Of a stretch of DNA of 64,000 bases, positions 978-61,520 are shown in pieces. The stretch spans positions 186,001-250,000 of IMG/VR virus record IMGVR_UViG_3300035156_000206. One strand, given 5' to 3'. Each line of letters begins with the position of its first letter. Position 1 is the first letter of the stretch. Below the pieces are notes generated by a model. It was not told the origin of the DNA. It saw only the letters and a list, made by a program, of their open reading frames with translations, and did no database searches. The position numbers and the translations under genes are program-made.

Positions 978-3900
978 ATGAAACTAAAATTCCGCCAAGG
1001 CCTCGTTCGCTGCCAAACAGACAATAATAACAATCCTTTGTTCCTGCAACGCACGGGACATGCTGTTTCTCTGGTCGTATCACCTACCCCAACAATCGTC
1101 ACATTCGCTCACACCGATACAGACTATCTGTACACGGAAGGAAAGAATGTCCCTAGTGCTTGGCTAGGTCCTTTCCTTGCTGATAAAGATTATTGGCTGT
1201 ACTGGGATCTCAATATCATCACAGGACTGCGCACGTTCGGTCACACACTTCGCGCTCCAATCACATCAAGAACTCCTCCAGCACAGCCACTGGTGGATCA
1301 GCACTGGTTTGACTTAAACACAACATCAATGCGTGTGTGGAATGGTAACGTCTGGAATACTGTCATCCGCGTGTTTGCATGTAAGTATGCTCTAGGTACT
1401 GTGTTTGAAACAATGCTGAAGCCTCTGTCGAAGCAATTCACTGGCTCACAAGTGTCTCTTAATGTTCCATGCAAATCGGGAGCACTGATCTTCGATACGG
1501 TTGGAAAGCCCTTGAAGACGTCTACAAATACGTTCTTCACTACTGAAACGGGAGCTGCAGTATCCGGATTCGCAAGTGCCATCAACATCGCATCGTTGTT
1601 CAAGGAAGGTGAGGCTCAAGAAGTTATCCCAGCCTACTCAATGGTATACTTCTCAGGCTTCCACAAGCTCAAGCGTGCCAACAATAATACGTCACCGCTA
1701 ATCCCTGTTGGTATGGTCGAGACGGCGCTGACGCCTGGACAAGTTGGCCAAATGGTAACCGAAGGTTTGGTGGTTAGTGATCAATGGAATTGGACCACTG
1801 TCAACCAGCCTCTGTACATTGGAGTCAATGGGGAACTTACCGTAACACAAATGCAGCCTGATCAAGGTCCAATCGCATTCGTTATGTCACCTGACTCTGT
1901 TATGATCATTCGCACACAGTTATCACGTGGCGATCGAGGTAACGATGGTGTGATTGGTGTAGACGGAGCTGATGGTGCCCCAGGTCCCATTGGACCACAA
2001 GGTTTGCCTGGCGATCAAGGAGAAGTTGGTCCAGAAGGTCCAATCGGACCACAAGGTATTCCAGGTAATGATGGAGCAGATGGATCTCTAAACGCCGTAG
2101 CACGTGCGGGCGACGAGATGACTGGTGCACTGATTCTGCATGCTGATCCAATGACTTCGATGCAAGCTGCCACAAAGCAGTACGCAGACTCAGTATCTAC
2201 AGGCCACTTACGTATCCCATGCCGCGTTGGTTCAAAGACTGCACTGACTCTGTATGGCTCTCAAGTGGTAGACAATGTAGTGGTTGTCGTTGGTGATCGT
2301 GTGCTCGTCAAGAACCAAAGCGGAAATGGTCCGCACAAAGACAATGGTATCTACATAGTTACCAATGGCGAATGGACACGGGCAGGCGATGCTGCCACTA
2401 GCCAAAATATGGTTACTGGTATGATTGTCTATATCAGTGAAGGATCGACTCAAGCAGGACAGGCATTTGTTGTCAGCACTGTTGGTAATATTTTCGTCGG
2501 CACCACACCAATTCAATTTATCTCGTTCAACAACTCGCAGGTAATTGTACTGTCAGGTGCCGCTGGTGGATCGGGAACTACTTCGATCCCTGTCACACTG
2601 ACGAACTCTGGTGTAATCCCCGGCTCGTACACACAAGTGACTGTAAACACTGCTGGTCAAGTAACATATGGACAGAGTCCATCCACTATTGCTGGGTATG
2701 GTATTACCAATGCCGTCAACAAGCAAGGTGACAGCATGTCAGGATTCTTGCAGTTGGTAGCAGATCCAATCCTTGGAGACCATGCTGCGACCAAGAACTA
2801 TGTAGATACTCGCACGTCTGGTCCAGGATTTATCACAGCTGGTGGTCTAGCATTCAACGCAAATAGCCTCAGTGTAGTGTCTGTATCACAAAATCGGATT
2901 GTGGTGAATCCAGGTACCATTGACTTGGCATTGACGGGCGTATCTGCTGGTACATATAACAGCGTAACAGTTGACGGATATGGACGTATCACTGCTGGTT
3001 CGTCAGTAGGAAACTCACAGATCACACTAAGTGGAGATGCTACGGGTTCAGGCACATCCGCAATCAATGTGCAACTATCAAGTACTGGTGTTACAGCAGG
3101 TACGTACACTCAGGTGACAGTCGACGTCAAGGGCCGTATCACTACGGGATCTGCCCCAACAACACTTGCGGGATTCGGAATTACAGATGCGATAAAGAAG
3201 ACCGGCGACACGATGACCGGTAATCTGGTAATGGGTACTTCAGATACGGTATCAGCATCAAATCGTTGGATCCAGCGAGTTCGTGATCCTGTCAACCCAC
3301 AAGACGTTGCTACAAAGAACTATGTGGATACAGCAACTGGTGCGGTACTGACACCAGGCAATGGTTTAGCATTCGAAGGCAATCTACTGAACATTGTACC
3401 AGTAAGTACAAACCGAATCGTTGTTGCTCCAGGCACTATTGATTTAGCTACATCCGGAGCTGCTGCTGGAACATACCAACAAGTTACCGTCGACGTGTAT
3501 GGTCGTGTCACTAGTGGTGCTAATCCTCCACTGGTAAATGCAAACATCACACTATCTGGTGACGTGTCTGGTTCTGGTACTTCTGCAATTGCCGTTACGT
3601 TGGCGAACAGTGGCGTTTCGGCTGGTGCGAACTATACCAAGTTTACGGTCAACTCAAAAGGTATTGTAACTGCAGCTGCTACACCAACGACGTTTGCTGG
3701 ACTGGGGTTAGTAGATGGCCTAGATTCATTAAGTGATGTGGTACTAACTACACCTTCATCATTACAGGTATTGACGTACAATGGTGCCAACTGGATTAAC
3801 TCGTCACCAGCACAAGCAACTGACAAGTTGGTAGCTACCAGTTCTACAGATACTACCCCTGGATACTTACACAGCAAATTGGCATTAACACCACGGTTTT

Positions 3901-4877
3901 CGACATCAATCACTAGCCCAAGTGGAAATGAAACGTTTGCTGTTGACTTAGCCACAACGGGTGTGACGGCTGGTGGTCCATACAACACTTTCAATGTGGA
4001 TGCATATGGTCGCATCACTGTAGCCAATAACACATCTGGCTCTAACCAACCAATCACTCTGTCTGGTGATGCAACAGGAACCGGGTCAACAGCAATTACA
4101 GTAGCCCTGTCCAATACTGGTGTTCCAGCAGGGACGTACACTAAGGTCACTGTCGATGCTAAAGGACGTGTCACTAGTGCTGCCAACCCAACTACCATGT
4201 CTGGGTACGGGCTGACTGATGCTCAGCCATTGAATGGTTTCCTGTCGAACATATCTACAGGCAATGCCGGTATTGTTGCGAAGAACTCAACATCTGCCTA
4301 CTTCATATCGATTGTTGGTACTGCAGGACGAATCAACGTCACCAATGGTGTAGGGTATAATGGAAATCCAACTATCGATCTGGCTTCAGGTGTAATTCCA
4401 GTAGCTGGAACGTATACTAAGTTGACGGTTGATACGTACGGGCGGGTTATTGCTGGTCAAACTATTACAACATCAGATGTTGGTGGATTGGGAACCATTG
4501 CAGGACAGAATGCAAACAACGTAACCCTTACGGGCGGCAGCGTCACCAATACCAAAGTGTTGCCAAGAATTAGCACCGTAGCATATGCCGCAAACGTAAA
4601 TATCGACTGGGCAACTGCGGACATCGTAAGGGTGGTGTTGACGGGGAATATAAATATCACAAACATTGGGGCGGGACCAGGACAGAAATGTATCCTGGAA
4701 TTGATACAAGACGCCACAGGTGGACGTACGGTAACATTCACCACCGAGACCAGGTTTGGCACAGACATCACTGGATTTACCGCATCGACGGGCGCTAACA
4801 AGCTCGACCGCATCGGATTTATCTACAGTGAAATATACACGACATACGATGTCGTTGCAGTTATTCGAGGATTCTAA
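978..4877 (+). CDS. Long virion fibre protein (shared MKLxFRQG N-domain, short collagen segment, repeated ITLSGD.TG.GT / GTY..VTVD.KGR fibre units)
   Basis: 1299-aa ORF with GXY triplets near aa 320-370 and many fibre repeats; the N-terminal ~310 aa are paralogous to ORFs 10372 and 42122. Confidence 0.8.
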   Translation: MKLKFRQGLVRCQTDNNNNPLFLQRTGHAVSLVVSPTPTIVTFAHTDTDYLYTEGKNVPSAWLGPFLADKDYWLYWDLNIITGLRTFGHTLRAPITSRTPPAQPLVDQHWFDLNTTSMRVWNGNVWNTVIRVFACKYALGTVFETMLKPLSKQFTGSQVSLNVPCKSGALIFDTVGKPLKTSTNTFFTTETGAAVSGFASAINIASLFKEGEAQEVIPAYSMVYFSGFHKLKRANNNTSPLIPVGMVETALTPGQVGQMVTEGLVVSDQWNWTTVNQPLYIGVNGELTVTQMQPDQGPIAFVMSPDSVMIIRTQLSRGDRGNDGVIGVDGADGAPGPIGPQGLPGDQGEVGPEGPIGPQGIPGNDGADGSLNAVARAGDEMTGALILHADPMTSMQAATKQYADSVSTGHLRIPCRVGSKTALTLYGSQVVDNVVVVVGDRVLVKNQSGNGPHKDNGIYIVTNGEWTRAGDAATSQNMVTGMIVYISEGSTQAGQAFVVSTVGNIFVGTTPIQFISFNNSQVIVLSGAAGGSGTTSIPVTLTNSGVIPGSYTQVTVNTAGQVTYGQSPSTIAGYGITNAVNKQGDSMSGFLQLVADPILGDHAATKNYVDTRTSGPGFITAGGLAFNANSLSVVSVSQNRIVVNPGTIDLALTGVSAGTYNSVTVDGYGRITAGSSVGNSQITLSGDATGSGTSAINVQLSSTGVTAGTYTQVTVDVKGRITTGSAPTTLAGFGITDAIKKTGDTMTGNLVMGTSDTVSASNRWIQRVRDPVNPQDVATKNYVDTATGAVLTPGNGLAFEGNLLNIVPVSTNRIVVAPGTIDLATSGAAAGTYQQVTVDVYGRVTSGANPPLVNANITLSGDVSGSGTSAIAVTLANSGVSAGANYTKFTVNSKGIVTAAATPTTFAGLGLVDGLDSLSDVVLTTPSSLQVLTYNGANWINSSPAQATDKLVATSSTDTTPGYLHSKLALTPRFSTSITSPSGNETFAVDLATTGVTAGGPYNTFNVDAYGRITVANNTSGSNQPITLSGDATGTGSTAITVALSNTGVPAGTYTKVTVDAKGRVTSAANPTTMSGYGLTDAQPLNGFLSNISTGNAGIVAKNSTSAYFISIVGTAGRINVTNGVGYNGNPTIDLASGVIPVAGTYTKLTVDTYGRVIAGQTITTSDVGGLGTIAGQNANNVTLTGGSVTNTKVLPRISTVAYAANVNIDWATADIVRVVLTGNINITNIGAGPGQKCILELIQDATGGRTVTFTTETRFGTDITGFTASTGANKLDRIGFIYSEIYTTYDVVAVIRGF

Positions 4878-42077: not shown

Positions 42078-42095
42078 TCGTGATAAATACCACGA
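42078..42095 (+). promoter_or_regulatory. Late promoter TAAATA (42084-89) in a small hairpin loop
   Basis: TCGTG-ATAAATAC-CACGA upstream of the collagen fibre ATG at 42122. Confidence 0.6.
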
Positions 42096-42121
42096 TCAAT
42101 ACTAGAACGGAGCAAAAATTA

Positions 42122-45454
<3,333 letters not shown>

Positions 45455-47682: not shown

Positions 47683-48753
47683 TCAGTACTCGTTGGTTAC
47701 TGGCTCGTAAGGTGGCTTGATGACAGCACGGTCTTTGCGATTGTGCATGATCGATGAGATCAGCGCGACGACAATGAATGCTGCACCAATTGTTCCCGAT
47801 ACCAGCTCGGACATGTGGTGGAATGTGCTGATGAACATGATCGTTGCCAGAGCACCAATTGCGTAGAACGCACCGTGTTCAAGGTATCGGAATTCAGCCA
47901 GCGTGCCCTTGTCGACGAGATACAGTGTCATTGACCGGACGAACATTGCACCAACACCCAGGCCAAGCGCAATCACGAGCAGGTTGTTTGTCACAGCAAA
48001 TGCACCAATCACACCATCGAACGAGAAGGACGCATCCAACACTTCGAGGTACAAGAAGCCCATCAGACCGTTCTTTGCAACCATCACGGCCGTGCCGTTG
48101 GTAACAACTTCCTCTTCCTCGTTACCAGTGAACAACTCGAGGCTATCAACAAGCACGTATGTGATGATGCCAGCCCCGCCTGCCATGAGGAACGAGATAG
48201 CTTCTGCAGGGATCGCAATATATTTGCTGACGATGTACAGGATAGCCATGGTAATGACGATCTGGATGGATTCAGCATTGCCGATCTTGGCGAGCGGTTT
48301 CTCAATCATAGCAACCCAGTGCGTATCTTTCTCAGCGTCCAGAAAGAACTTGAGGAAGACCAACATCAGGAATGCTCCACCAAAGCCGGCGATCATGGAA
48401 TGGGTTGCGGTCAATGTAGCAGCGTACTTGGCAGGATCATTCATTGCCATGACACTAACATCCCACATGCCCATGCCTGTCGTGATTGCCACGATCAAGA
48501 TAGGGAACACGATCCGCATGCCAAATACAGCGATCACCATACCGACGGTGAGGAACATCTTGCGCCAGAATGGCGTCATTTTGTTCAACTGCTTTGCATT
48601 TACCACCGCGTTGTCGATAGACAGCGATGTTTCGAGCAGACCCAACATCAGGACTGCGTAGAGGCCTGGCATACCACCGAAGTAGTAGCCCGCCCCTACA
48701 GCCAAGATCGTGAAAACGAACGACCAGTTAAAATAGCTGAGGGTGGACTTCAT
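47683..48753 (-). CDS. TerC-like integral membrane protein (DUF475 type)
   Basis: LETSLSIDNAVVNA, IAVFGMR, FLYLEVLDASFSFDGVIGAFA and YLEHGA.YAI motifs. Confidence 0.9.
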   Translation of the reverse strand: MKSTLSYFNWSFVFTILAVGAGYYFGGMPGLYAVLMLGLLETSLSIDNAVVNAKQLNKMTPFWRKMFLTVGMVIAVFGMRIVFPILIVAITTGMGMWDVSVMAMNDPAKYAATLTATHSMIAGFGGAFLMLVFLKFFLDAEKDTHWVAMIEKPLAKIGNAESIQIVITMAILYIVSKYIAIPAEAISFLMAGGAGIITYVLVDSLELFTGNEEEEVVTNGTAVMVAKNGLMGFLYLEVLDASFSFDGVIGAFAVTNNLLVIALGLGVGAMFVRSMTLYLVDKGTLAEFRYLEHGAFYAIGALATIMFISTFHHMSELVSGTIGAAFIVVALISSIMHNRKDRAVIKPPYEPVTNEY

Positions 48754-48757
48754 GGTA

Positions 48758-49543
48758 TTAGGCGCCCGTCTTTGCTTTGTACCATTCGATGAATTCGCGG
48801 TTCAGCAGCTTGCCGTACAGGTCTTCATCGGACATATTTTCGATCTGGTTGGCATTGAAGAAGCCAACATTGTCGTACTTGTCTGCCATGCGCTGCAGGA
48901 AGCGGAACGCGCAGCCCGAACCTGGGTCGCTGATGCCGATGAACTGGTAGTAGACGGCGGCATCTTTGAATTCTTCGAACAGCGTTTCGGTGGCCGTTTC
49001 GTCACCATTGTCACCATCGGTTACGATGATTGCGTAAGCTGGTGGCTTGGCTTTACCAGTAGCAGCCGGGGCAACAGGCTCAGGAGCCGGGGTCGCTTTG
49101 CCAAACAGCTTGCCGAGGATGCCCTTTGCTGCGGTAGTGGCGCCGGCAATACTGGCCGAGACGGCACTTGGCTTGTAACGATCGTTGATCAGGCGCAGCA
49201 GTGGCGAATAGTTGGTGCCGGACCAAAGACGCAGGGAGCTGTTGTTCAGGATATGCTTGTTGACGTAGTCACCGAACATTGATTCTTTGACGTCCGGTGC
49301 TTCTTGTGCGTTTGAACCGAACACGAATGCATCGAGCGTTGCATTGTCGTCGAACTTCATGGCCAGCGGGAAGACGCGCTGCACGGTGTTGTGCATGACG
49401 CCGCGCGAGAACAACCCTTGGGCGGAGCCGGACACGTCCAGCGAAATGCTGACCTGGGCACAGATTTTCGGTGCCGAGCGTTTCATCAGGATGATATCGA
49501 CTTTCTTGCGCAGGTCGATGAGGTTTGGTTGGTCAATGGCCAT
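48758..49543 (-). CDS. vWA-domain protein (TerF-associated type)
   Basis: LDVSGS MIDAS motif, GTNYSP, IVTDGD and QFIGI. Confidence 0.88.
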   Translation of the reverse strand: MAIDQPNLIDLRKKVDIILMKRSAPKICAQVSISLDVSGSAQGLFSRGVMHNTVQRVFPLAMKFDDNATLDAFVFGSNAQEAPDVKESMFGDYVNKHILNNSSLRLWSGTNYSPLLRLINDRYKPSAVSASIAGATTAAKGILGKLFGKATPAPEPVAPAATGKAKPPAYAIIVTDGDNGDETATETLFEEFKDAAVYYQFIGISDPGSGCAFRFLQRMADKYDNVGFFNANQIENMSDEDLYGKLLNREFIEWYKAKTGA

Positions 49544-49545
49544 GG

Positions 49546-50694
49546 TTATTTCCTTTGGATAAGTTTGGTTTGCAACTCTTTTTGCATCTCGGCTACGCGG
49601 TTTGACACGAGCTTACGATGTTTGGCACCTTCTTCGGTGATCTGGAATACTCCCTGGATCCCCGAAATAAGTTCTGATTGGACATGCTCGATCGTTGTTA
49701 GATCGATAATGCCACGCTGACTTTGTTGCGCAACCGCAATGGACGTCTGCTTCAGCTTGGTAGCTGTATCGCGAGCCATTTGGTTGGTAAAGTCATTGAT
49801 TTGGGTTGACAGCTGGGCACCACGAGCTTGCTCGTCTACCATCATCCCGACCATGAACTGACGCTTCCAGTTCGGGACAACGTGTGCCTTCACGAGCTTG
49901 AACTGCTCGATCAGGTGAACACCATTCTGTTGCATCAAGCGAATTGCCGGTGCCGTTTGATAGGCAGCCATTTTCAGGCGCTCGAAGTTCGATGCCTTCA
50001 TGTCGAGACTTACCAAATAGTTCTTGGCATCATTGACTTGTTGGACATCGTAAGGATCTGGGTTGGGGCCAAGGCTGGCTACGAAGGCATCGGTCTCGAC
50101 CTGCAGCTCTTCAATCGCCAAGCGGGAAGCAAGCACGAGCTTGTCCAGAGCATGGTACTGATCCATGTTGGCTTCGTACAGGTCTTCCATGATGTCGAGT
50201 CGCTTGCTGATGCCCGAGGAGAATACATCCACCTCATTGACGATCTTTTCCACCTGGGTGGTAGCCAAATCAAATTGGCCAACGACGCGATCTTTTGTAT
50301 TGCGGAATTTGTCGAGCCAGCCACCAATGACAGGCAGGCGGCTCTTCTGGTTCAGCACACCAATGTTGATACCTTTGGCTGCGATGATGATGTTAGTGAG
50401 CTTGTCACCAACAAAGTCCAAATCGCTGGACTTGCTGTGTTGCAGCATATTGTCTGCCATATCGGCAATACGATCCTGCACATCATCACCGAACGCTACC
50501 AGAGCCGTAGGATCTACCTTCACCAGCTGATCCTTGAGCTTACGGATCTCGGCCATTCCTTCTGAGCTGTACTTGGCCATCGCCGTGTTTAATACAGAAG
50601 GACTACCGTTCAGCGAAGCATTTGTCGCTACAGCGGATGAGCCAAAAGGACTCGATTCGCTTGTGCGCGCAGACTGCGATTTGAACTGTTTCAT
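49546..50694 (-). CDS. telA: Toxic-anion resistance protein TelA/KlaA
   Basis: Coiled coil with L.....E.N...Y..L..., AP.IR..Q.N..L and VP.WK.Q motifs. Confidence 0.88.
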   Translation of the reverse strand: MKQFKSQSARTSESSPFGSSAVATNASLNGSPSVLNTAMAKYSSEGMAEIRKLKDQLVKVDPTALVAFGDDVQDRIADMADNMLQHSKSSDLDFVGDKLTNIIIAAKGINIGVLNQKSRLPVIGGWLDKFRNTKDRVVGQFDLATTQVEKIVNEVDVFSSGISKRLDIMEDLYEANMDQYHALDKLVLASRLAIEELQVETDAFVASLGPNPDPYDVQQVNDAKNYLVSLDMKASNFERLKMAAYQTAPAIRLMQQNGVHLIEQFKLVKAHVVPNWKRQFMVGMMVDEQARGAQLSTQINDFTNQMARDTATKLKQTSIAVAQQSQRGIIDLTTIEHVQSELISGIQGVFQITEEGAKHRKLVSNRVAEMQKELQTKLIQRK

Positions 50695-50781
50695 TCGATC
50701 TCCCTTAACAATGACATCATTATACGGATGGGCTATACGAAAAGTCAACAAATATTTCTGCTAACTTTGAAACTGAAGGGT

Positions 50782-52026
50782 CTAAGCCAGAATTTGTTTC
50801 AGGGAGGTGAACGATTGCTCGATTTCAGCCAATACACCTTTCTTGCGAATGAACTGCTTATCCATCTGCAAGTCGGCGATCTTGGATGCCGAGGATGTCT
50901 CGAGAGCGGACATCAACACAACACATTGCTGTTTCCACGTGGGAACAACTGTCTGCGATATTTGTTGAATTCGATCTGCCTTGTCTTTACTTGCCATCTG
51001 CAACATTCGGATCGCAGGTGCATTCAGAATAACTGAGTGGGCAAGCTTTTCAAGTTCAGTGACCTTACGCTCAAACCGAGTAACACTGTCACGGAAGTAT
51101 GCCAAGTCCTGCCCAGCAAAAATGTTGGTAGTATCGACTGTCTTTTCCATTTCAGGAAGAGTCTTGGTGAGGTGACGTTCTGTAATGATCTTGCCAGCAA
51201 TAACGTGCAGGTTCAATAAGGTGAAGTTGTCACGATTGTTCTTGAATACATCATCAAACGAATCAATCAATTTGAGCAGTTCAGACACGCTAGACTTCAG
51301 TTCCACAACCAGCACGTCCACTCTATTGATATTGTTTTGGAACTTCTGTACAACTTCGTTAACGGAAGGTACGTACGCTCCTTGACGGATCCAACGCATC
51401 AGACCAGATTCTTGTGGAGTGGTGAGGATGGTGGTGAGCTCTTTGGATGCTTCCATTGTGATCAATAGGTCTTGGATCTTGTCATTGACCTGGGAAGTCT
51501 TACCAGATGTCTGCTCTTTGATGATCCCATCGATCAGCGTACCAAACCGAACGCGCTGCTCGTCGGAATAATGCAACACGTAGGATGCGTCTGCAATGTC
51601 GGCAGCATCAACGATGTTACGTACTCGAGCTATGTCTTTGTGGGAGAGTTTAACACAAAGTGGGTGGTCGCGGTAGAATGGATCCACCACATCAACACCA
51701 ACAGCTTTACTCGGGAAAAGTACTTTCCCGGCAGTGCCCTTGGGAGCAGGCTTAGGTATAGGTATAGGTATAGGTATAGGGGATTTTGGTGCCCGTTCGA
51801 GTTCCATCCGCTTCTGCAATTCCTCCCGGACCATGCGCCGTTGTTCTTCGAGGCGCAGATGTTCTTCGTTGGTCATTACCGATTTGGTAGGATCGTCTAC
51901 AACAGGAGAAGGCTTTGGTGCTGGAGTAGGCATAGTCCGCGCAGGAGCGGACTTGAATACCTGCTTCGGTTTGTTTGGTTGTGCCATGGTCGTTACTTTA
52001 TTTGGGAAGAGCGGTTTCGGTTCCAT
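50782..52026 (-). CDS. Divergent TelA paralogue with a Pro/Lys-rich N-terminus
   Basis: F.NN..N...L...I.AG, APAIR..Q and VPTWKQQ mirror the adjacent TelA. Confidence 0.7.
   Translation of the reverse strand: MEPKPLFPNKVTTMAQPNKPKQVFKSAPARTMPTPAPKPSPVVDDPTKSVMTNEEHLRLEEQRRMVREELQKRMELERAPKSPIPIPIPIPKPAPKGTAGKVLFPSKAVGVDVVDPFYRDHPLCVKLSHKDIARVRNIVDAADIADASYVLHYSDEQRVRFGTLIDGIIKEQTSGKTSQVNDKIQDLLITMEASKELTTILTTPQESGLMRWIRQGAYVPSVNEVVQKFQNNINRVDVLVVELKSSVSELLKLIDSFDDVFKNNRDNFTLLNLHVIAGKIITERHLTKTLPEMEKTVDTTNIFAGQDLAYFRDSVTRFERKVTELEKLAHSVILNAPAIRMLQMASKDKADRIQQISQTVVPTWKQQCVVLMSALETSSASKIADLQMDKQFIRKKGVLAEIEQSFTSLKQILA
51753..51780 (+). repeat. In-frame hexanucleotide tandem repeat (TAGGTA)4+
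   Basis: Encodes PIPIPIPKP in the TelA paralogue. Confidence 0.85.
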
Positions 52027-52580: not shown

Positions 52581-52913
52581 TTAGCAGGTGAGAATGTTCT
52601 TCCCAATGCCTGGCATCATCGGTGGATTGACGTCTACTGGATGATACGGAAACTGTGGGTACACCGGGAGGACATTAGGTGATGGTGCCTGCTTGTCAAT
52701 CTCCTTCATCAGGCGCTGAAGCGCTTCATTAGGAGACACCTTAACTGTACCTGGTGCTACTACCGCTGCTGGCTTAGCCAATGGCGGTGTTGTTTTTGTC
52801 AACACAGTGTCCAAATGTTGACAAATCGATAACCATTGCTCTGGTGTAGGGACTTTGTCCCCCGCCAGCTCAACGAAACCTGTTAACCAATATGCGAATT
52901 GTTCTGGGTTCAT
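52581..52913 (-). CDS. Hypothetical phage protein (MNPEQFAYWL.GF.E)
   Basis: ATGA overlap with the RNA ligase stop. Confidence 0.7.
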   Translation of the reverse strand: MNPEQFAYWLTGFVELAGDKVPTPEQWLSICQHLDTVLTKTTPPLAKPAAVVAPGTVKVSPNEALQRLMKEIDKQAPSPNVLPVYPQFPYHPVDVNPPMMPGIGKNILTC

Positions 52914-53941
52914 GCTATTTCCTTTCCGATGTTTGCGATATACCAATCTTTACCTACACGATTGACCTTGCCCATTACTTCTTTTGCGACCAGACCACTT
53001 GCTTCAATGGTATCCAGTTCTTCTTTGATGACGTCCGAACCCAGGAACTTCAGGAATGTTCCGATGTTCTTCACATCATCAGCATCTAGGCCCATTTCGA
53101 CCACTTTGCCCTTCATCTGCATCAGACGGTTCTCCGTAACCACTTTGGTTGCGAATTCGTTGATGCTGTTGACCTTCTCCACATCCACCTCAGCCAGAAC
53201 TTTGACCTTCGATGCCGAGTGCTTCTCGCCTTTTACTTTGAACAGAAGTCCACGCTGGTAAAAACGCTCGTCTGTGTCTACACAGCTCCAAACAATGCCT
53301 TCACCTACGCCATTGTCAACGCCAAAGTGCTTAGCTACTGGGCACTCTGTTTCGACCTCAATTGTCAGTTCAACCAGTTTGTTTTGGCTCAGCTCAGGGT
53401 TGGTGAAATCAATGTCCATCTCCCAAGTTGGGAATTCGAAGATTGAGTACACGTTCTGTGAACTGAATGCTTCGCCCATTGCTGAGAAGAGTTCGTCCTG
53501 GATGTTTTTGCCTAGGTAGCGAGTTGTTTCGCCCGTGCCGTGACGGATACCAAAGATCACAAACATCTTTGGTAAGCCACTGATCCCAACACCCTTTTGG
53601 ATGTTGCCACCGCACCACTCACCGTAGATCGTGAGGGTTTCATCAGTACCCAGGCCGGCCAGTTGGCGGATATTGCCGAAAGCCAGTTCCCACATTGCTG
53701 TACGGGTGTGGACATACTGAGCAAACCCTGCATTGTCACTTTCAGGTGTGATGATGCGCTCACGCGATTGAGCCCAAAGTACACCGGACTCTTGCACCAC
53801 TGACGAATTGGTTCCGTGCAGCTTAACAGTTCCACGGAACTTCAGCACCGGAGCTGGGATTGTGTGATAGTTGCACATATCACGGACGTGTTTGACGATC
53901 GAGCGAAATTGGTCGATCGATGGGTATTTAATGTGTTCCAT
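52910..53941 (-). CDS. Rnl2-like RNA ligase
   Basis: KLHGTN (motif I), RERI, YGEWCG, FVIF, GEGIV and LFKVK nucleotidyltransferase motifs; AAGGAG RBS. Confidence 0.85.
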   Translation of the reverse strand: MEHIKYPSIDQFRSIVKHVRDMCNYHTIPAPVLKFRGTVKLHGTNSSVVQESGVLWAQSRERIITPESDNAGFAQYVHTRTAMWELAFGNIRQLAGLGTDETLTIYGEWCGGNIQKGVGISGLPKMFVIFGIRHGTGETTRYLGKNIQDELFSAMGEAFSSQNVYSIFEFPTWEMDIDFTNPELSQNKLVELTIEVETECPVAKHFGVDNGVGEGIVWSCVDTDERFYQRGLLFKVKGEKHSASKVKVLAEVDVEKVNSINEFATKVVTENRLMQMKGKVVEMGLDADDVKNIGTFLKFLGSDVIKEELDTIEASGLVAKEVMGKVNRVGKDWYIANIGKEIA

Positions 53942-53943
53942 GG

Positions 53944-54144
53944 TCATTCTCCTTGTTTGGGGACCCAATAAAATATGGGATTGTTTCGTTTGTGTTGGCG
54001 TTGCCGCTCTTCTACGCCGTACCAATAGGTGCCGCTCCATTCCATCAGAAAGCTCACCACTCCACACCGCAGTTGCATCACTACAATATAATGCCCCGGG
54101 TTGATTGGTGTTCTTTCGTATATCCCAAAGCGGCGGTTACTCAT
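53944..54144 (-). CDS. Small hypothetical protein
   Basis: 66 aa, packed between neighbouring genes. Confidence 0.5.
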   Translation of the reverse strand: MSNRRFGIYERTPINPGHYIVVMQLRCGVVSFLMEWSGTYWYGVEERQRQHKRNNPIFYWVPKQGE

Positions 54145-58390: not shown

Positions 58391-58879
58391 CTATTCGATT
58401 GAAGCCTGAAGGTAGTTGATGGCTGATTGGAGCCGCAGAATATCGTCCTTAGCCAATCCAATCATCTTATTGCACTTACCACATAATAGCCCACGCACAT
58501 TACCTGTACTATGGCAATGATCTAAGTTGGCGGCTGTAGATTGGTTTCCTGTCCCAATGAACAGTTGAAAACATATTGCACATTTGTGATCTTGTTTTGC
58601 CAACAAAGTGGCATGTTGCTCTAATGTGATCCCATAGTTTCGGAGCAAGTGATTACGACGGGTAGAGAGTTTGACTTGGTCTGTCTGAAGGTATTCTTGA
58701 TAGTTCTTGCTGGCTCTGTACTTAGCCCTGGCTGCGGTCTTGGCCTCAGAAGGAATGTAGGTGCATTCAATACACCTGCCAGAGACGTGGCGCTCACCTA
58801 TGTGACCACGCTTGCATGGTGTGGTTGACATGTATTTGGTTAAGCCTGCAGCAATGGCTTGTTGTCTTGGTGAATTCAT
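58391..58879 (-). mobile_element. HNH / endonuclease-VII-type homing endonuclease
   Basis: CKRGH...RCIEC, YGITLE, Q...CAIC and DHCHSTG.VRGLLC..CN..IG motifs. Confidence 0.88.
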
Positions 58880-58905
58880 TATTGCTTTCCGGTTCTGGAA
58901 TAGGT

Positions 58906-58936
58906 GAAGGCCCGACACTAACCTGGCCGGGCCTTC
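58906..58936 (-). terminator. Strong hairpin between the RNA modules and the HNH gene
   Basis: GAAGGCCCG-13nt-CGGGCCTTC 9-bp stem; no U-tract, so it may be a processing or protective stem. Confidence 0.6.
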
Positions 58937-58947
58937 TATTTGATTTG

Positions 58948-59067
58948 ATGACAAGTCAATGTGTTTACCAATTTCACCAACCCCGCATCAGAAGTACTCT
59001 GCTGATGCAACGCACTTTTGGTGCGGGGTGAAGGACTCGAACCTCCAAGGAGTTAACTATATGTCAT
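58948..59067 (-). ncRNA. Circularly permuted tRNA-like module B
   Basis: 5'-ATGACA-tata-GTTAA-ctcctt-[GGAGG TTCGAGT CCTTC]-ACCCCGC-A-CCA-linker-GCGGGGT-TG-[GTG AAATTGGTAAA CAC]-A-TTGAC-t-TGTCAT; the acceptor strands pair 7/7. Confidence 0.75.
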
Positions 59068-59090
59068 TGGTTCCAGATTATGTATCACGT

Positions 59091-59226
59091 CGACTGCTGA
59101 GCTTTGCTAATAAAATGGCACTCTACCTCTGAGCTACCAGCCACCAAAAGAGACTATTGCGAATCTGTTTTGGTTGGCCGGGATGGATTCGAACCACCGA
59201 CTTCCGATTTGGGACTCAACACCGCG
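59091..59226 (-). ncRNA. Circularly permuted tRNA-like module A
   Basis: 5'-TGTTGAGT..AAATCGG-aagtc-[GGTGG TTCGAAT CCATC]-CCGGCCA-A-CCA-linker-TGGCTGG-TA-[GCTC AGAGGTA GAGT]-G-CCATTT..GCTCAGCA; the acceptor strands pair 7/7 with one G-U. Confidence 0.75.
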
Positions 59227-59391
59227 CTTTATTGTACAATCCAATAAACCGATAAAGCTGTATAGGCAAGAAACTAAGGCTGACTAGATACTAAATGTAC
59301 CTGTTAAGCTAAGACTAATGATAAAGCTACCTATTCTTTAATACCTTGCGTGCGGTGGGAATCACTAACTATGACCCCACCCACATATTTC
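59227..59391 (-). ncRNA. Structured non-coding segment preceding the tRNA-like modules
   Basis: Long GTGGGTGGG/CCCACCGCA hairpin after the upstream stop, a TTAG-repeat tract, and a TTTATTG/CAATAAA hairpin; no credible ORF. Confidence 0.5.
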
Positions 59392-60192
59392 TTAGAAGCC
59401 TTCTGGGTGCAAGAACGAGATCAGCTTTTGCCCGATCTTGGTCTGGCGCACTGGCGTCGCGTTTGCACGCATACGCGCTTGCTTCGTGGCCTGGATCAGA
59501 TCGTCCAGACGACCCAGCAAGGCCGATTTTTCGGTGGTGGTCATTGCCGACGACCAGGTTTCTTTGGTGAAGGTGCCGACGTTGACGGTCTCTTCCCACT
59601 TTTCGATCTGTGCCGGATGCTTGTCCGTTGGAGCGACCAGCACTTTGTGCTTGATTTCTTTCGCGGTCTTGGCGCGAACTTCGGCATTTGCCTGGCGGAA
59701 GACGTGCTTGCCGCGGGCCGAATCAGGAACCCAGTTGATGCCTGGCGCCAGCGTAGGAATGACTTCGTACACGGTGCGCAGCGCTTTCAGCTTGGTTTCC
59801 ATGCCCAGCAGGAAGCCGACTGGCAGCTTTTCTGCCAACACGGTGCCGTCAGTCAGGACCAGGTCAGCGACGGCGTCTTGATTCGTTGCTTCTTTTTGCA
59901 GCACGACGTCGTAGTAACGGGTGACGCCGTCGAGTACGTACTGCAGCTTTTCGTGGACGGTGGTAACCATTTCCAGGTGCTGCTCTTCAGCCTTTTCCGT
60001 TGCTGCGGTTGCCGCTTCGTTACTGGCGTCGCCGGAGAACATTTTCAGGGTACGATGCGAACCGGTGAAGTGGGTTGCTTTGTCCGAGAAGGTCTTGATT
60101 GCTTCAGGGATGATCTTGTTTGCAACGCCTTGAACATCGACTTCAACTGCCAGAATCTCATGCAGCATTGGTGCTTTTTTGTTATCGCTCAT
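59392..60192 (-). CDS. Coiled-coil protein of unknown function (DUF7873-like, recalled from memory)
   Basis: LHEILAVE, KATHF.G..RT, TTV.EKL, QKEATNQ.A.ADL, IPTL.PG..W, HPAQI and AR.RAN motifs; strongly C/G-ending codons; GAGG RBS. Confidence 0.8.
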   Translation of the reverse strand: MSDNKKAPMLHEILAVEVDVQGVANKIIPEAIKTFSDKATHFTGSHRTLKMFSGDASNEAATAATEKAEEQHLEMVTTVHEKLQYVLDGVTRYYDVVLQKEATNQDAVADLVLTDGTVLAEKLPVGFLLGMETKLKALRTVYEVIPTLAPGINWVPDSARGKHVFRQANAEVRAKTAKEIKHKVLVAPTDKHPAQIEKWEETVNVGTFTKETWSSAMTTTEKSALLGRLDDLIQATKQARMRANATPVRQTKIGQKLISFLHPEGF

Positions 60193-60482: not shown

Positions 60483-61520
60483 TTATGGACGAAAGTGGCG
60501 TGGTGGCATCTCTGCCAGCTGTTTGATGCGGTTCTTTTTGCTGGACGTAAATCCGAAGTCGCCTTCCGATTCTGATGATGAGGGGCTCTCAGTCATCATA
60601 GCACGCAGCTTCTGTGCCGCCCAATCGACATCACGCCGGAACACACGGGTCAGAATGATGAACTCGCGCAGGTGGGCAATCGAGAACCCTTCTGACAGGT
60701 TTACGTACTTTTCCACTTCCTCTGCTGTCAGCCCTGGCTCTTTGGCTTTCAGGTAAATTGCCCGCGCCGCTGATGTTGGCATACCAACCTTGATCACCGA
60801 ATCGAAACGGGATGGACGGTCGATGAACCGACGATCCATTCGTTCAGGGTAGTTTGTGGTAGCAACAAAGATGATGTTGTCCACTTGGTTCTCCCCGTCC
60901 AGAATGGAAAGGTAGTTTGCTTCACCGTATGTTTGTACCAGTGCATCCATATCTTCCAACAGCGCCACGATTTGGCGATGTGGTTCGATTTTTCGGATCA
61001 GCTTCAGGCACTCAGCGGCATAATGTGGATGACCAACCACAAATGCGATACCTTGCATTTTGTTGATAACGATATCTACCAGCTGGGCAAGGGTAGACGT
61101 CTTTCCTGAACCAGGAGGACCCCACAGAAAAATACCACGCTTGTAGATCATCTTGCGGGCAATGAATTCAGGCTTGAGGTCAGCAAACTCCTCAATCTCA
61201 CGCAGTACCGATTCGGACGCGCTATCAGGGAGATGAATGAGGCCATCAGTGGCATTCTCTACCTTGGTCAGGTAGAATCCAGCAGCATCTGAGTGGCCCC
61301 CTGTATACATGCCACATTCGAGAGCTGGAGTAGAATCTTGCACACCCCAGTAAGTCTTACCACTTCGTGCCCAACGAGATGGGTTATTGGAGCTGGAAAT
61401 ATCAGACGAGTTGGTAGAGACAGGTGTCTCTGATACCGCCACACAGTCTCCGCTAGACGTTGGTTTGAGATCGGTACCAACTGTGGACATCAACTCACTG
61501 ATTTCATCTACATTACTCAT
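60483..61520 (-). CDS. AAA+ ATPase
   Basis: GIFLWGPPGSGKT, LLEDMD, LDG, ATTNYPE and RPSRFD motifs. Confidence 0.9.
   Translation of the reverse strand: MSNVDEISELMSTVGTDLKPTSSGDCVAVSETPVSTNSSDISSSNNPSRWARSGKTYWGVQDSTPALECGMYTGGHSDAAGFYLTKVENATDGLIHLPDSASESVLREIEEFADLKPEFIARKMIYKRGIFLWGPPGSGKTSTLAQLVDIVINKMQGIAFVVGHPHYAAECLKLIRKIEPHRQIVALLEDMDALVQTYGEANYLSILDGENQVDNIIFVATTNYPERMDRRFIDRPSRFDSVIKVGMPTSAARAIYLKAKEPGLTAEEVEKYVNLSEGFSIAHLREFIILTRVFRRDVDWAAQKLRAMMTESPSSSESEGDFGFTSSKKNRIKQLAEMPPRHFRP

What the first reader, a model, noticed from the sequence alone, without database searches (positions are those of the whole stretch)
58948..59226. Two tandem circularly permuted tRNA-like RNAs (T-arm/CCA half upstream of its own acceptor/D-arm half)
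Seen: on the minus strand each module runs T-arm (GGTTCGAATCC/GGTTCGAGTCC type), acceptor 3' strand, discriminator A, encoded CCA, a ~30-nt linker, the exactly matching acceptor 5' strand, then a D-arm. Module A pairs CCGGCCA/TGGCTGG and module B pairs ACCCCGC/GCGGGGT; cross-pairing between modules fails. The anticodon loop is replaced by an open-ended stem made by the module ends (B: GTTAA/TTGAC plus ATGACA/TGTCAT; A: AAAT-C-GG/CCATTT with a bulged C plus TGTTGAGT/GCTCAGCA). In A the CCA is itself paired to a TGG in the linker hairpin. Known: this topology occurs in permuted tRNA genes (red algae, some archaea), two-piece tmRNA and bacterial YrlA Y RNAs, but YrlA normally lacks an internal CCA. 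Inference: RNase P and 3' trimming could release chargeable two-piece tRNA mimics with no cleavable anticodon (decoys for anticodon nucleases, or RelA/aaRS modulators), or phage ligase substrates. B has a Leu-type D-arm and A73. I do not know of this arrangement being described in phages.
Basis: partly seen in the sequence, partly recalled or inferred. Interest (0 to 1): 0.92.

Follow-up and report, generated by a model that had tools for sequence, protein, structure and literature searches.

The report
Phage tRNA-shaped RNAs beside DUF7873
Two neighbouring genes in this giant phage encode small RNAs folded like a tRNA whose two halves are swapped and whose anticodon loop is replaced by a closed stem, and the same RNA sits next to the same unknown protein (DUF7873) in about 90% of the related phage loci examined, so it is a real, widespread and apparently undescribed phage RNA family related in design to bacterial YrlA "Y RNAs".

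Summary
On the minus strand, module A (59227-59087) and module B (59067-58948) each run closing-stem strand, T-arm, acceptor 3' strand, A, CCA, structured linker, matching acceptor 5' strand, D-arm, closing-stem strand.

They are not chance or misassembly. A covariance model built only from 39 distant relatives hits exactly these two places (73.5 and 46.9 bits; E 1e-28 and 1e-17) and nothing else in 64 kb.

The modules lie directly downstream of a DUF7873 gene. In 75 unrelated phage contigs with DUF7873, 66 have a T-loop within 700 nt downstream, and 57 of those have a perfect 7-bp acceptor complement (chance 6%). Isolated Klebsiella, Ralstonia, Rhizobium and Vibrio phages carry them, unannotated.

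Architecture matches YrlA, but the Ro60-binding motif and Ro60 gene are absent, and Rfam's YrlA score is 28 against a threshold of 69.

Acceptor stems and discriminators vary freely, which argues against specific aminoacylation. Function and processing remain inferred.

Verdict: a real, Ro60-independent phage variant of the permuted tRNA-mimic class, with a new candidate protein partner.

The parts
59087..59227 (-). Module A: complete permuted tRNA-like RNA. Order: outer closing stem, internal loop, inner stem, variable loop, T-arm, acceptor 3' strand-A-CCA, linker hairpin, acceptor 5' strand, D-arm, inner stem, UAUUAGCAAAG loop, outer stem.
   Evidence: Sequence. R1 covariance model 73.5 bits, E 1.8e-28 at 59095-59220. 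Rfam YrlA full-length sub-threshold hit, 28.1 bits. RNAalifold on 9 lineage members gives 39 pairs, 23 with compensatory changes. Folding z = -2.6.
58948..59067 (-). Module B: second permuted tRNA-like RNA, with a class II (Leu-like) 3-bp D-stem and long D-loop.
   Evidence: Sequence. R1 46.9 bits, E 6.7e-17 at 58936-59068. The minimum-free-energy fold equals the proposed structure, z = -3.0. RNAalifold on 8 lineage members gives 33 pairs, 15 compensatory. Both closing helices covary.
59182..59198 (-). A: T-arm GGTGG TTCGAAT CCATC.
   Evidence: G53, T54, T55, C56, A58 and C61 are invariant in the family alignment.
59171..59181 (-). A: acceptor 3' strand CCGGCCA, discriminator A, CCA.
   Evidence: 7/7 complement to 59143-59137.
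59144..59170 (-). A: 27-nt linker. It forms a hairpin that extends the acceptor helix; CCAAAA pairs with TTTTGG and the discriminator is bulged.
   Evidence: Folds. The pairing is kept by the compensatory change CCA:TGG to CTA:TAG in L096 and L100.
59120..59143 (-). A: acceptor 5' strand TGGCTGG, U8 A9, D-arm GCTC AGAGGTA GAGT.
   Evidence: The D-stem is 96% paired, with 4 of 4 pairs showing compensatory changes across 39 relatives.
59030..59046 (-). B: T-arm GGAGG TTCGAGT CCTTC.
59019..59029 (-). B: acceptor 3' strand ACCCCGC, discriminator A, CCA.
   Evidence: ACCA is invariant in 8 of 8 lineage members.
58987..59018 (-). B: 32-nt linker with a conserved hairpin CATCAG...CTGATG ending at position -1 of the acceptor.
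58961..58986 (-). B: acceptor 5' strand GCGGGGT, U8 G9, D-arm GTG AAATTGGTAAA CAC.
58906..58936 (-). G+C-rich hairpin after module B. It is the likely 3' end or terminator of the RNA unit, but no T-run follows it.
   Evidence: Fold. Comparable hairpins follow module B in relatives. Not called by the terminator scan.
59253..59269 (-). Conserved box TTGCCTATACAGCTTTA upstream of module A. Family consensus is TTGACCCACAGCTTTAG, 61-72 nt before the T-arm. It could be a promoter or a leader element.
   Evidence: about 25 loci carry the box at this fixed distance. There is no comparable match elsewhere in the window.
59392..60192 (-). DUF7873 gene (266 aa), the conserved genomic partner of the RNA.
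   Evidence: Pfam PF25283, E 4.7e-64. Linkage statistics. AlphaFold2 pLDDT 84 with no significant fold match in PDB or BFVD. 443 homologues, all single-domain and unnamed.

Best explanation
The two modules are genes for small structured non-coding RNAs. They belong to a widespread family of phage-encoded tRNA mimics.

Each RNA folds into a tRNA-like L-shape, with T-arm, D-arm and a 7-bp acceptor helix, but in circularly permuted order. The acceptor end is closed by a linker. The place of the anticodon loop is taken by a long two-part stem made from the RNA's own 5' and 3' ends. This is the topology of bacterial YrlA Y RNAs.

The family is genetically coupled to the phage protein DUF7873, encoded immediately upstream on the same strand. 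It is not coupled to Ro60.

Proposed mechanism (inferred, not shown):
- The RNA presents a generic tRNA elbow plus acceptor helix to proteins that recognise tRNA shape rather than tRNA identity. Candidates are RNase P, CCA-adding and 3'-trimming enzymes, T- and D-loop modification enzymes, or host factors that attack or sense tRNA.
- The closing stem and its conserved internal loop (UUAGC-type motif) serve as the handle for a partner, most likely DUF7873. The result would be a Y-RNA-like ribonucleoprotein acting during lytic infection.
- Cleavage by RNase P at the 5' side of the acceptor strand, followed by trimming to CCA, would give a nicked two-piece form. This is plausible for members with long linkers, about 40% likely. 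It is not required by the data.
For: Shown:
1. Exact anatomy.
2. An independent covariance model hits only these two sites in the window, at 73.5 and 46.9 bits.
3. In 75 unique DUF7873 loci, 66 have a T-loop motif within 700 nt downstream on the same strand, at a median of about 150 nt. In 57 of those 66 the next 7 nt have a perfect complement 4-70 nt on, against a 6.4% null. The model adds further loci that the pattern scan missed.
4. No other neighbour of the window's DUF7873 gene is conserved across loci.
5. Covariation score is 0.786 against 0.231 in shuffles (0 of 500 shuffles reach it). The D-stem, which was never used for selection, is 96% paired with 4 of 4 pairs compensatory.
6. The universally conserved tRNA core nucleotides are invariant: U8, A14, G18, G19, G53, T54, T55, C56, A58, C61.
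7. Cognate 5' and 3' flanks pair better than non-cognate flanks, -15.0 against -10.4 kcal/mol, p = 2e-10.
8. In 8 closer relatives both closing helices of A and of B change by compensatory substitutions. Examples: ATGACA/TGTCAT to ATAACA/TGTTAT, ATCAT/ATGAT, AACAG/CTGTT; GTTAA/TTGAC to CAATG/CATTG, TGACG/CGTCA.
9. The family is present but unannotated in isolated phages: Klebsiella KpLz-2_45, Ralstonia phiRSL1, Rhizobium RHph_Y65 and Vibrio D505.
10. Encoded NCCA occurs in 74% of modules against 77% of ordinary tRNA genes in the same loci. Position -1 is T in 37 of 68 modules. Both are compatible with tRNA-type end processing.
11. Precedent: M. smegmatis YrlA is cut by RNase P in vivo and carries CCA (PMC4201824).
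12. The pair persists where no ordinary tRNA gene lies within 3 kb.
Against: - No expression, processing or binding data exist for any member.
- DUF7873 is near-neutral, with pI about 7, and has no recognisable RNA-binding fold. The ribonucleoprotein idea rests on gene linkage alone.
- In an unbiased sample, 5 of 12 permuted modules had no DUF7873 upstream, so the RNA can exist without it.
- Linker length runs from 2 to 61 nt. In A's lineage the CCA is selected as a paired element. This does not fit a universal need for a free CCA end.
- No sigma-70-type promoter was found, so the RNA might be part of the DUF7873 transcript.
Confidence: 0.6

Rival explanations
1. They are ordinary Y RNAs of the YrlA family. 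They work by binding a Ro60 (Rsr/TROVE) protein, either from the host or encoded elsewhere in the 292-kb phage genome, and tether it to an exonuclease as in Deinococcus and Salmonella.
For: Same permuted topology. Module A gives a full-length YrlA alignment in Rfam at 28.1 bits, and a relative gives 29 bits. YrlA RNAs are known in phages that carry Ro60 (PMC4201824). A subset of jumbo phages encode TROVE proteins (PMC7824862).
Against: The Rfam score is far below the gathering score of 69. The Ro60-binding motif GNCGAAN0-1G is present in only 3 of 89 5' flanks. There is no TROVE domain among the 12 largest ORFs of the window, nor among the unassigned proteins of 360 aa or more in the complete 77.7-kb Vibrio phage D505, which carries DUF7873 and a module. 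The conserved neighbour is DUF7873, not Ro60.
Confidence: 0.12
2. They are cis-acting parts of the DUF7873 transcript or of the tRNA operon. In this reading a tRNA-shaped processing and stability element is cut by RNase P, which separates the mRNA from downstream RNAs and caps its 3' end with an exonuclease-resistant tRNA-like structure.
For: The modules lie directly downstream of DUF7873 on the same strand in about 90% of loci. No sigma-70-like promoter lies in between. Ordinary tRNAs often follow. T is preferred at position -1, and CCA is retained as in tRNA genes.
Against: A hairpin follows the DUF7873 stop codon, and a conserved box sits at a fixed 61-72 nt before the T-arm, which suggests a separate unit. 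Two distinct module types (A and B) are kept in tandem across very distant phages. The elaborate covarying closing stems and the conserved internal loop are not needed for a cleavage signal. 5 of 12 modules in an unbiased sample lack DUF7873.
Confidence: 0.15
3. They are true permuted tRNA genes. In this reading the ends are cut and joined, for instance by the phage RNA ligase at 52910-54067, to make an anticodon loop, and the acceptor end is then opened. This would yield decoding tRNAs, as in the red alga Cyanidioschyzon merolae.
For: All tRNA core nucleotides, a 7-bp acceptor stem and CCA are kept. The modules often lie in tRNA arrays. An Rnl-type RNA ligase lies 5 kb away. A few B-type relatives have a closed hairpin at the anticodon-arm position.
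Against: The ends form long helices that covary as helices. The internal loops vary in size and sequence, with no conserved U33 or purine-37 pattern. No bulge-helix-bulge motif was noticed on reading the sequences, but none was formally searched for. The ligase is not linked to the modules in other loci. ARAGORN reports no tRNA here.
Confidence: 0.04
4. The finding is a chance resemblance, decayed tRNA pseudogenes, or a misassembly that shuffled tRNA halves.
For: None beyond the tRNA-like sequence itself.
Against: The same arrangement occurs in more than 70 independent assemblies and four isolate genomes. Covariation is strong. E-values are 1e-28 and 1e-17 from a model trained on other genomes.
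Confidence: 0.01

Closest known systems
YrlA (Y RNA-like A; Rfam RF02553), the tRNA-mimicking Y RNA of bacteria and some phages
   Same: Same circular permutation: closing stem, T-arm, acceptor helix closed at its end, D-arm, closing stem. The T- and D-loop nucleotides of tRNA are conserved. The mycobacterial member has a 7-bp acceptor stem, is cleaved by RNase P and ends in CCA (PMC4201824). Module A aligns over the full Rfam model.
   Different: The score is 28 bits against a gathering score of 69. The Ro60-binding motif is absent (3 of 89). No Ro60 gene is adjacent. The conserved neighbour is DUF7873. NCCA is genomically encoded in about three quarters of members. The linker is often long and structured, up to 61 nt. 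Carriers are lytic phages, including jumbo and N4-like phages.
Two-piece (circularly permuted) tmRNA of alpha- and beta-proteobacteria and cyanobacteria (Rfam RF01850 and relatives)
   Same: The gene order T-arm, acceptor 3' strand, CCA, intervening segment, acceptor 5' strand is the same. Both modules match positions 86-150 of the beta_tmRNA model (27.5 and 21.3 bits).
   Different: There is no mRNA-like reading frame and no pseudoknots. The size is only about 120-140 nt. ARAGORN calls no tmRNA. The G3:U70 alanine identity pair is present in 1 of 89 modules. A true D-arm is present.
Permuted tRNA genes of Cyanidioschyzon merolae and some other algae and archaea (from my own knowledge of the literature)
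   Same: The 3' half of the tRNA is encoded upstream of the 5' half, with a short intervening sequence at the acceptor end.
   Different: Those genes mature to normal decoding tRNAs through a circular intermediate made by the splicing endonuclease and ligase, and CCA is not encoded. Here there is no anticodon loop, and the ends form a long covarying helix.
Stable small RNAs of unknown function encoded in the phage T4 tRNA gene cluster (species 1 and species 2 RNAs; recalled from memory, not tested here)
   Same: Phage-encoded stable RNAs associated with tRNA genes and matured by tRNA-processing enzymes.
   Different: No sequence comparison was made here. As far as I know they are not described as permuted tRNA mimics or as linked to DUF7873.

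Membership tests
YrlA / bacterial Y RNA | Reaches the curated Rfam gathering score for RF02553. | tested here: not met
   28.1 bits against a gathering score of 69 for module A. Module B is not matched. A relative, L008, scores 29 bits.
YrlA / bacterial Y RNA | tRNA-like domain in permuted order (T-arm, closed acceptor helix, D-arm) held by a stem formed from the 5' and 3' ends. | tested here: met
YrlA / bacterial Y RNA | Ro60-binding motif GNCGAAN0-1G on the 5' strand of the closing stem (PMC4201824). | tested here: not met
   Found in 3 of 89 module 5' flanks. Absent from both window modules.
YrlA / bacterial Y RNA | Encoded next to, and bound by, a Ro60/Rsr (TROVE) protein. | tested here: not met
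   No TROVE domain in the window's 12 largest ORFs, nor in the complete Vibrio phage D505 genome. The neighbour is DUF7873. Binding itself cannot be tested with these tools. The remaining roughly 228 kb of this phage contig was not scanned.
Two-piece tmRNA | mRNA-like tag reading frame with resume codon, plus pseudoknots. | tested here: not met
   ARAGORN finds no tmRNA. The Rfam match covers only the junction, model positions 86-150 of 331.
Two-piece tmRNA | G3:U70 alanine identity in the acceptor stem. | tested here: not met
   Both window modules have G3-C70. G3:U70 occurs in 1 of 89 family members.
Permuted tRNA gene giving a decoding tRNA | The ends can be joined into a 7-nt anticodon loop with U33 and a purine at 37, and the tRNA has a defined identity. 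| tested here: not met
   The ends form 11-20 bp of covarying helix with variable internal loops. Discriminator and acceptor sequences are unconstrained.
Canonical tRNA | Detected as a tRNA by a standard tRNA finder or by the Rfam tRNA model. | tested here: not met
   ARAGORN finds 0 genes in the window. There is no RF00005 hit even at E up to 10.
DUF7873-linked permuted tRNA-like RNA (family defined here) | Match to covariance model R1, built from 39 other phage loci, and location downstream of a DUF7873 gene on the same strand. | tested here: met
   73.5 and 46.9 bits. The DUF7873 gene is at 59392-60192 on the minus strand.

The most novel reading that the evidence does not exclude
DUF7873 and these RNAs form a new kind of phage ribonucleoprotein. 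In it, a nicked, CCA-ended, anticodon-less tRNA mimic (made by host RNase P and 3' trimming) is used during lytic infection to capture, block or redirect a host factor that recognises tRNA shape. Such a factor could be a tRNA-directed defence nuclease or transferase, or a tRNA-processing enzyme. This would be a counter-defence or takeover device parallel to, but independent of, the Ro60/Y RNA system.
Probability: 0.2. Interest if true: 0.9.

Novelty: new variant of a known kind. Interest (0 to 1): 0.78.

Why it matters
Bacterial tRNA-mimicking Y RNAs are known only as partners of Ro60, and what their tRNA-like domain is for is still open.

Here the same RNA design is kept by selection in lytic phages of very different kinds: jumbo phages of Klebsiella, Ralstonia and Rhizobium, and N4-like Vibrio phages. 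It occurs without Ro60 and with a different, phage-restricted protein of unknown fold.

That separates the tRNA-mimic module from Ro60. It also gives a second, experimentally tractable system in cultured phages for asking what a tRNA-shaped RNA without an anticodon does.

Two practical consequences follow:
- It assigns a first functional context to Pfam DUF7873.
- It explains several hundred bases of unannotated, or wrongly ORF-annotated, intergenic DNA in published phage genomes.

Tried and rejected
- ARAGORN and Rfam at gathering thresholds found nothing.
- DNA similarity search of the region against 50,697 phage records found nothing.
- DUF7873 function:
  - No PDB sequence match.
  - No significant Foldseek match in PDB or BFVD, despite a confident model.
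  - No NCBIfam, PHROG or meaningful PADLOC match.
  - No paper mentions it.
  - All 443 homologues are single-domain and unnamed.
- Sigma-70 promoter and intrinsic terminator scans gave nothing convincing around the RNAs.
- An inner closing helix placed at fixed alignment columns across distant relatives was only 52% paired, because its register and bulge vary. I therefore assessed it per sequence and within the close lineage.
- Possible link to a Ro60-like protein: one DUF7873-less module (L223) lies upstream of a DUF2828 + DUF7788 (vWA) protein. Only 4 of 49 loci with that protein have a module, and at variable distances, so I do not claim a link. That protein has no PDB sequence match.
- Supplementary tables of the YrlA paper and the 2020 Ro60 review were not available.
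- The B-type module in some distant phages has a closed hairpin where the anticodon arm would be. I considered complete permuted tRNAs and rejected that reading because the loops are 4-8 nt with no consistent anticodon-loop pattern.
- I did not resolve what the conserved upstream box is.
Full report
**1. What is there**

Module A runs as follows:
- closing-stem 5' strand (GCGCGG)TGTTGAGT, 59227-59214
- CCC
- AAATCGG, 59210-59204
- a 5-nt variable loop, AAGTC
- T-arm GGTGG-TTCGAAT-CCATC, 59198-59182
- acceptor 3' strand CCGGCCA, discriminator A, CCA, 59181-59171
- a 27-nt linker
- acceptor 5' strand TGGCTGG, 59143-59137
- TA
- D-arm GCTC-AGAGGTA-GAGT
- G
- CCATTT
- an 11-nt loop, TATTAGCAAAG
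- GCTCAGCA(GTCGACGT), ending at 59087

Module B has the same plan over 59067-58948. Its acceptor pair is ACCCCGC/GCGGGGT. It has a 3-bp D-stem with a long D-loop of the class II (Leu-like) type. Its closing helices are GTTAA/TTGAC and ATGACA/TGTCAT.

Cognate acceptor strands pair 7/7; cross-module pairing gives 2/7. Unconstrained folding of B returns exactly this structure (z = -3.0). Folding of A returns the outer stem, the T-arm and an acceptor helix that continues into the linker with CCA paired to TGG (z = -2.6).

ARAGORN finds no tRNA or tmRNA in the whole window. Rfam finds nothing at gathering thresholds. With permissive thresholds the only meaningful hits are:
- a full-length alignment of A to YrlA, at 28.1 bits against a gathering score of 69;
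- alignments of both modules to the junction region of permuted beta-proteobacterial tmRNA, positions 86-150.

**2. Context**

The window is part of a 292-kb IMG/VR phage contig. All genes around the RNAs are on the minus strand.
- Directly upstream lies a 266-aa protein matching Pfam DUF7873, E 5e-64.
- Further upstream are an AAA ATPase and unknown proteins.
- Downstream is an endonuclease VII/HNH gene.
- An RNA ligase lies 5 kb away.

No DNA-level relative exists among deposited phages. DUF7873 homologues occur in Rhizobium, Ralstonia, Klebsiella/Serratia, Vibrio, Gordonia and other phages. In Rhizobium phage RHph_Y65 the gene sits inside a tRNA gene array.

**3. The RNA is a family, and it travels with DUF7873**

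I fetched 80 IMG/VR loci encoding DUF7873 homologues of 34-54% identity.

To avoid circular reasoning I located only the T-loop motif GTTCRANYC downstream of the gene. I then asked whether the seven bases after the T-stem find a complement nearby.
- Of 75 unique loci, 66 have such a T-loop within 700 nt on the same strand, at a median of about 150 nt after the stop codon.
- In 57 of those 66 there is a perfect 7/7 complement 4-70 nt further on, against 6.4% for shuffled heptamers.
- That complement is followed by U8-A9 and a D-arm.
- The acceptor sequences all differ.

None of the window's other neighbouring genes is conserved beside DUF7873 in these loci. The gene and the RNA are therefore the conserved pair.

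A covariance model (R1) was built from 39 of these distant modules with no window sequence included. It hits the window only at 59095-59220 (73.5 bits, E 1.8e-28) and 58936-59068 (46.9 bits, E 6.7e-17). It also finds high-scoring modules in loci my pattern had missed. Junctions of ordinary tandem tRNAs score only 20-37 bits.

Tandem A-type plus B-type pairs recur in very distant phages.

Cultured, sequenced phages carry the modules in stretches left unannotated, or covered by tiny doubtful ORFs:
- Klebsiella phage KpLz-2_45: B then A
- Ralstonia phage phiRSL1: B then A
- Rhizobium phage RHph_Y65
- the N4-like Vibrio phage D505

DUF7873 is essentially absent from 185,579 bacterial and archaeal species genomes; only three short metagenome-bin contigs match. 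It is therefore a protein of lytic phages.

The reverse association is weaker. In a generic pattern scan of IMG/VR, 12 of 120 matches had a perfect acceptor complement. Seven of those had DUF7873 immediately upstream and five did not.

**4. Structure and covariation**

On the 39-sequence alignment:
- The T, acceptor and D stems give a covariation score of 0.786 against 0.231 in shuffles (0 of 500 shuffles reach it). The score collapses when partners are slid by one to three columns.
- T and acceptor pairing were used to find the sequences, so the independent evidence is the D-stem. It is 96% paired and 4 of 4 pairs show changes on both sides.
- The universally conserved tRNA core nucleotides are invariant: U8, A14, G18, G19, G53, T54, T55, C56, A58, C61.

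For the closing stem, each module's own 5' and 3' flanks pair far better than flanks swapped between modules: -15.0 against -10.4 kcal/mol, p = 2e-10.

Eight closer relatives (61-78% protein identity) keep both modules. RNAalifold finds 39 pairs for A, 23 with compensatory changes, and 33 pairs for B, 15 with compensatory changes.

- A's outer helix TGTTGAGT/GCTCAGCA becomes TACGAAGGC/GCCTTTGTA, TACGATAG/CTATCGTG, TATCGAGA/TCTCGATA and others.
- A's inner helix GG/CC + AAAT/ATTT becomes GA/TC + ATAC/GTAT.
- B's ATGACA/TGTCAT becomes ATAACA/TGTTAT, ATCAT/ATGAT, TCAAT/ATTGA, AACAG/CTGTT.
- B's GTTAA/TTGAC becomes ATATG/CGTAT, CAATG/CATTG, TGACG/CGTCA.

The linker is not a passive spacer in this lineage.
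- In A it forms a hairpin coaxial with the acceptor helix, with the discriminator bulged. Where CCA has become CTA (L096, L100), the partner TGG has become TAG.
- In B a hairpin ATCAG...CTGAT abuts position -1.

**5. What it is not**

*Not a canonical YrlA.*
- The Rfam score is well below threshold.
- The Ro60-binding motif occurs in 3 of 89 flanks.
- No TROVE protein is found among the window's large ORFs.
- None is found in the complete genome of Vibrio phage D505.

*Not tmRNA.* There is no tag reading frame, and G3:U70 occurs in 1 of 89 modules.

*Not a permuted gene for a decoding tRNA.* The ends make covarying helices, and the internal loops vary.

*Not a by-product of tRNA arrays.* In the window's lineage, in KpLz-2_45 and in phiRSL1 no ordinary tRNA lies within 3 kb.

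*Not a misassembly.* The arrangement recurs in more than 70 independent assemblies.

**6. How it probably works**

Shown: these are conserved, structured, tRNA-shaped RNAs without an anticodon loop, genetically coupled to DUF7873.

Inferred: the family conserves only shape determinants, namely the elbow, a 7-bp helix and, usually, NCCA. Acceptor sequences and discriminators are free (A 21, T 21, G 19, C 7). The RNA is therefore more likely read by proteins that recognise tRNAs generically than by a particular aminoacyl-tRNA synthetase.

Several features are compatible with RNase P cleavage and 3' trimming into a nicked two-piece form:
- Encoded NCCA is as frequent as in the phages' own tRNA genes, 74% against 77%.
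- T is preferred at position -1.
- M. smegmatis YrlA is a precedent.

Three observations show that a free CCA end cannot be the whole story:
- linkers as short as 2-6 nt;
- members without CCA;
- selection for CCA:TGG pairing.

The closing stem with its conserved internal loop is the obvious handle for a partner. A UUAGC-type motif lies at a fixed position, +25 to +27 after the acceptor 5' strand, in 21 of 89 modules. DUF7873 is the candidate by linkage only. It has a confident but unmatched fold and is not basic.

**7. Novelty**

The design (permuted tRNA mimic, YrlA-like) is known, including RNase P cleavage, a CCA end and occurrence in Ro60-encoding phages.

Four things appear new:
- a large, Rfam-unrepresented family in lytic phages;
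- its independence from Ro60;
- its coupling to DUF7873, on which no paper exists;
- the recurrent A + B tandem.

I rate it a new variant of a known kind, of considerable interest. The function is still open.

Noticed in passing
window 59253-59269 (-); also about 25 related loci, e.g. L017, L018, L033, L058: A conserved box lies at a fixed 61-72 nt upstream of the T-arm of the first module. The consensus is TTGACCCACAGCTTTAG; the window has TTGCCTATACAGCTTTA. It has no comparable match elsewhere in the window, so it is not a general promoter of this phage. It could be a dedicated promoter, a leader element or a protein-binding site.
   Followed up: partly
window 59308-59331 (-); L096-L103 about 125-145 nt upstream of module A: A second intergenic box, GGCAGCYTYATCATYAGCTTYAGC (window: GGTAGCTTTATCATTAGTCTTAGC), is conserved among the close relatives. 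It lies between the DUF7873 stop codon and the RNA.
   Followed up: no
related loci, e.g. L036, L039, L020, L028, L056, L058, L061, L081: In a subfamily, the base of the closing stem is flanked by 5' AAGUA and 3' YGAAAG. This arrangement resembles a sarcin-ricin/loop E (bulged-G) motif. It is not present in the window's modules, and part of it may overlap a -10-like element.
   Followed up: partly
window 58391-58954 (-), probable start ATG near 58880: An endonuclease VII/HNH-type gene lies directly after the RNA unit, probably a free-standing homing endonuclease. The same arrangement occurs in relatives L096 and L098, while other relatives have a radical-SAM or WYL_2 gene there.
   Followed up: partly
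window 52910-54067 (-): RNA ligase gene (Pfam RNA_ligase PF09414; phrog_548), 5 kb from the RNAs. It is not conserved next to DUF7873 in other loci.
   Followed up: partly
window 47683-52026 (-): A cluster of two TelA-like (toxic anion/tellurite resistance) proteins and a membrane protein (phrog_30252). Vibrio phage D505, another carrier of the RNA, also has a tellurite-resistance-type gene and a membrane transporter near its DUF7873 region.
   Followed up: no
window 978-4877 (+) and 42080-45454 (+): Two very large proteins (1299 and 1124 aa) with collagen triple-helix repeats, presumably fibre or structural proteins.
   Followed up: no
L223:3451-4854 (-) and 275 relatives in IMG/VR (L229-L308): A 467-aa phage protein with DUF2828 + DUF7788 (vWA-like) domains is common in tRNA-array regions. 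Its helical-plus-vWA domain order recalls Ro60, but that was not tested. A permuted module lies upstream of it in only 4 of 49 loci.
   Followed up: partly
L093 (Vibrio phage D505, OZ195742.1 60380-60622): Two tiny annotated CDSs (VPHD505_0060 and VPHD505_0061, 31 and 44 aa) lie over or beside the permuted tRNA-like RNA. They are probably spurious gene calls.
   Followed up: no
window 60483-61520 (-): AAA+ ATPase with weak similarity to IetA/IteA and TRIP13-type ATPases of defence systems. It is two genes upstream of the RNAs and not conserved with them.
   Followed up: no
L051, L038, L026, L024, L005: In some relatives the module spans 160-240 nt because the linker at the acceptor end is very long. 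The content of these long inserts was not examined.
   Followed up: no
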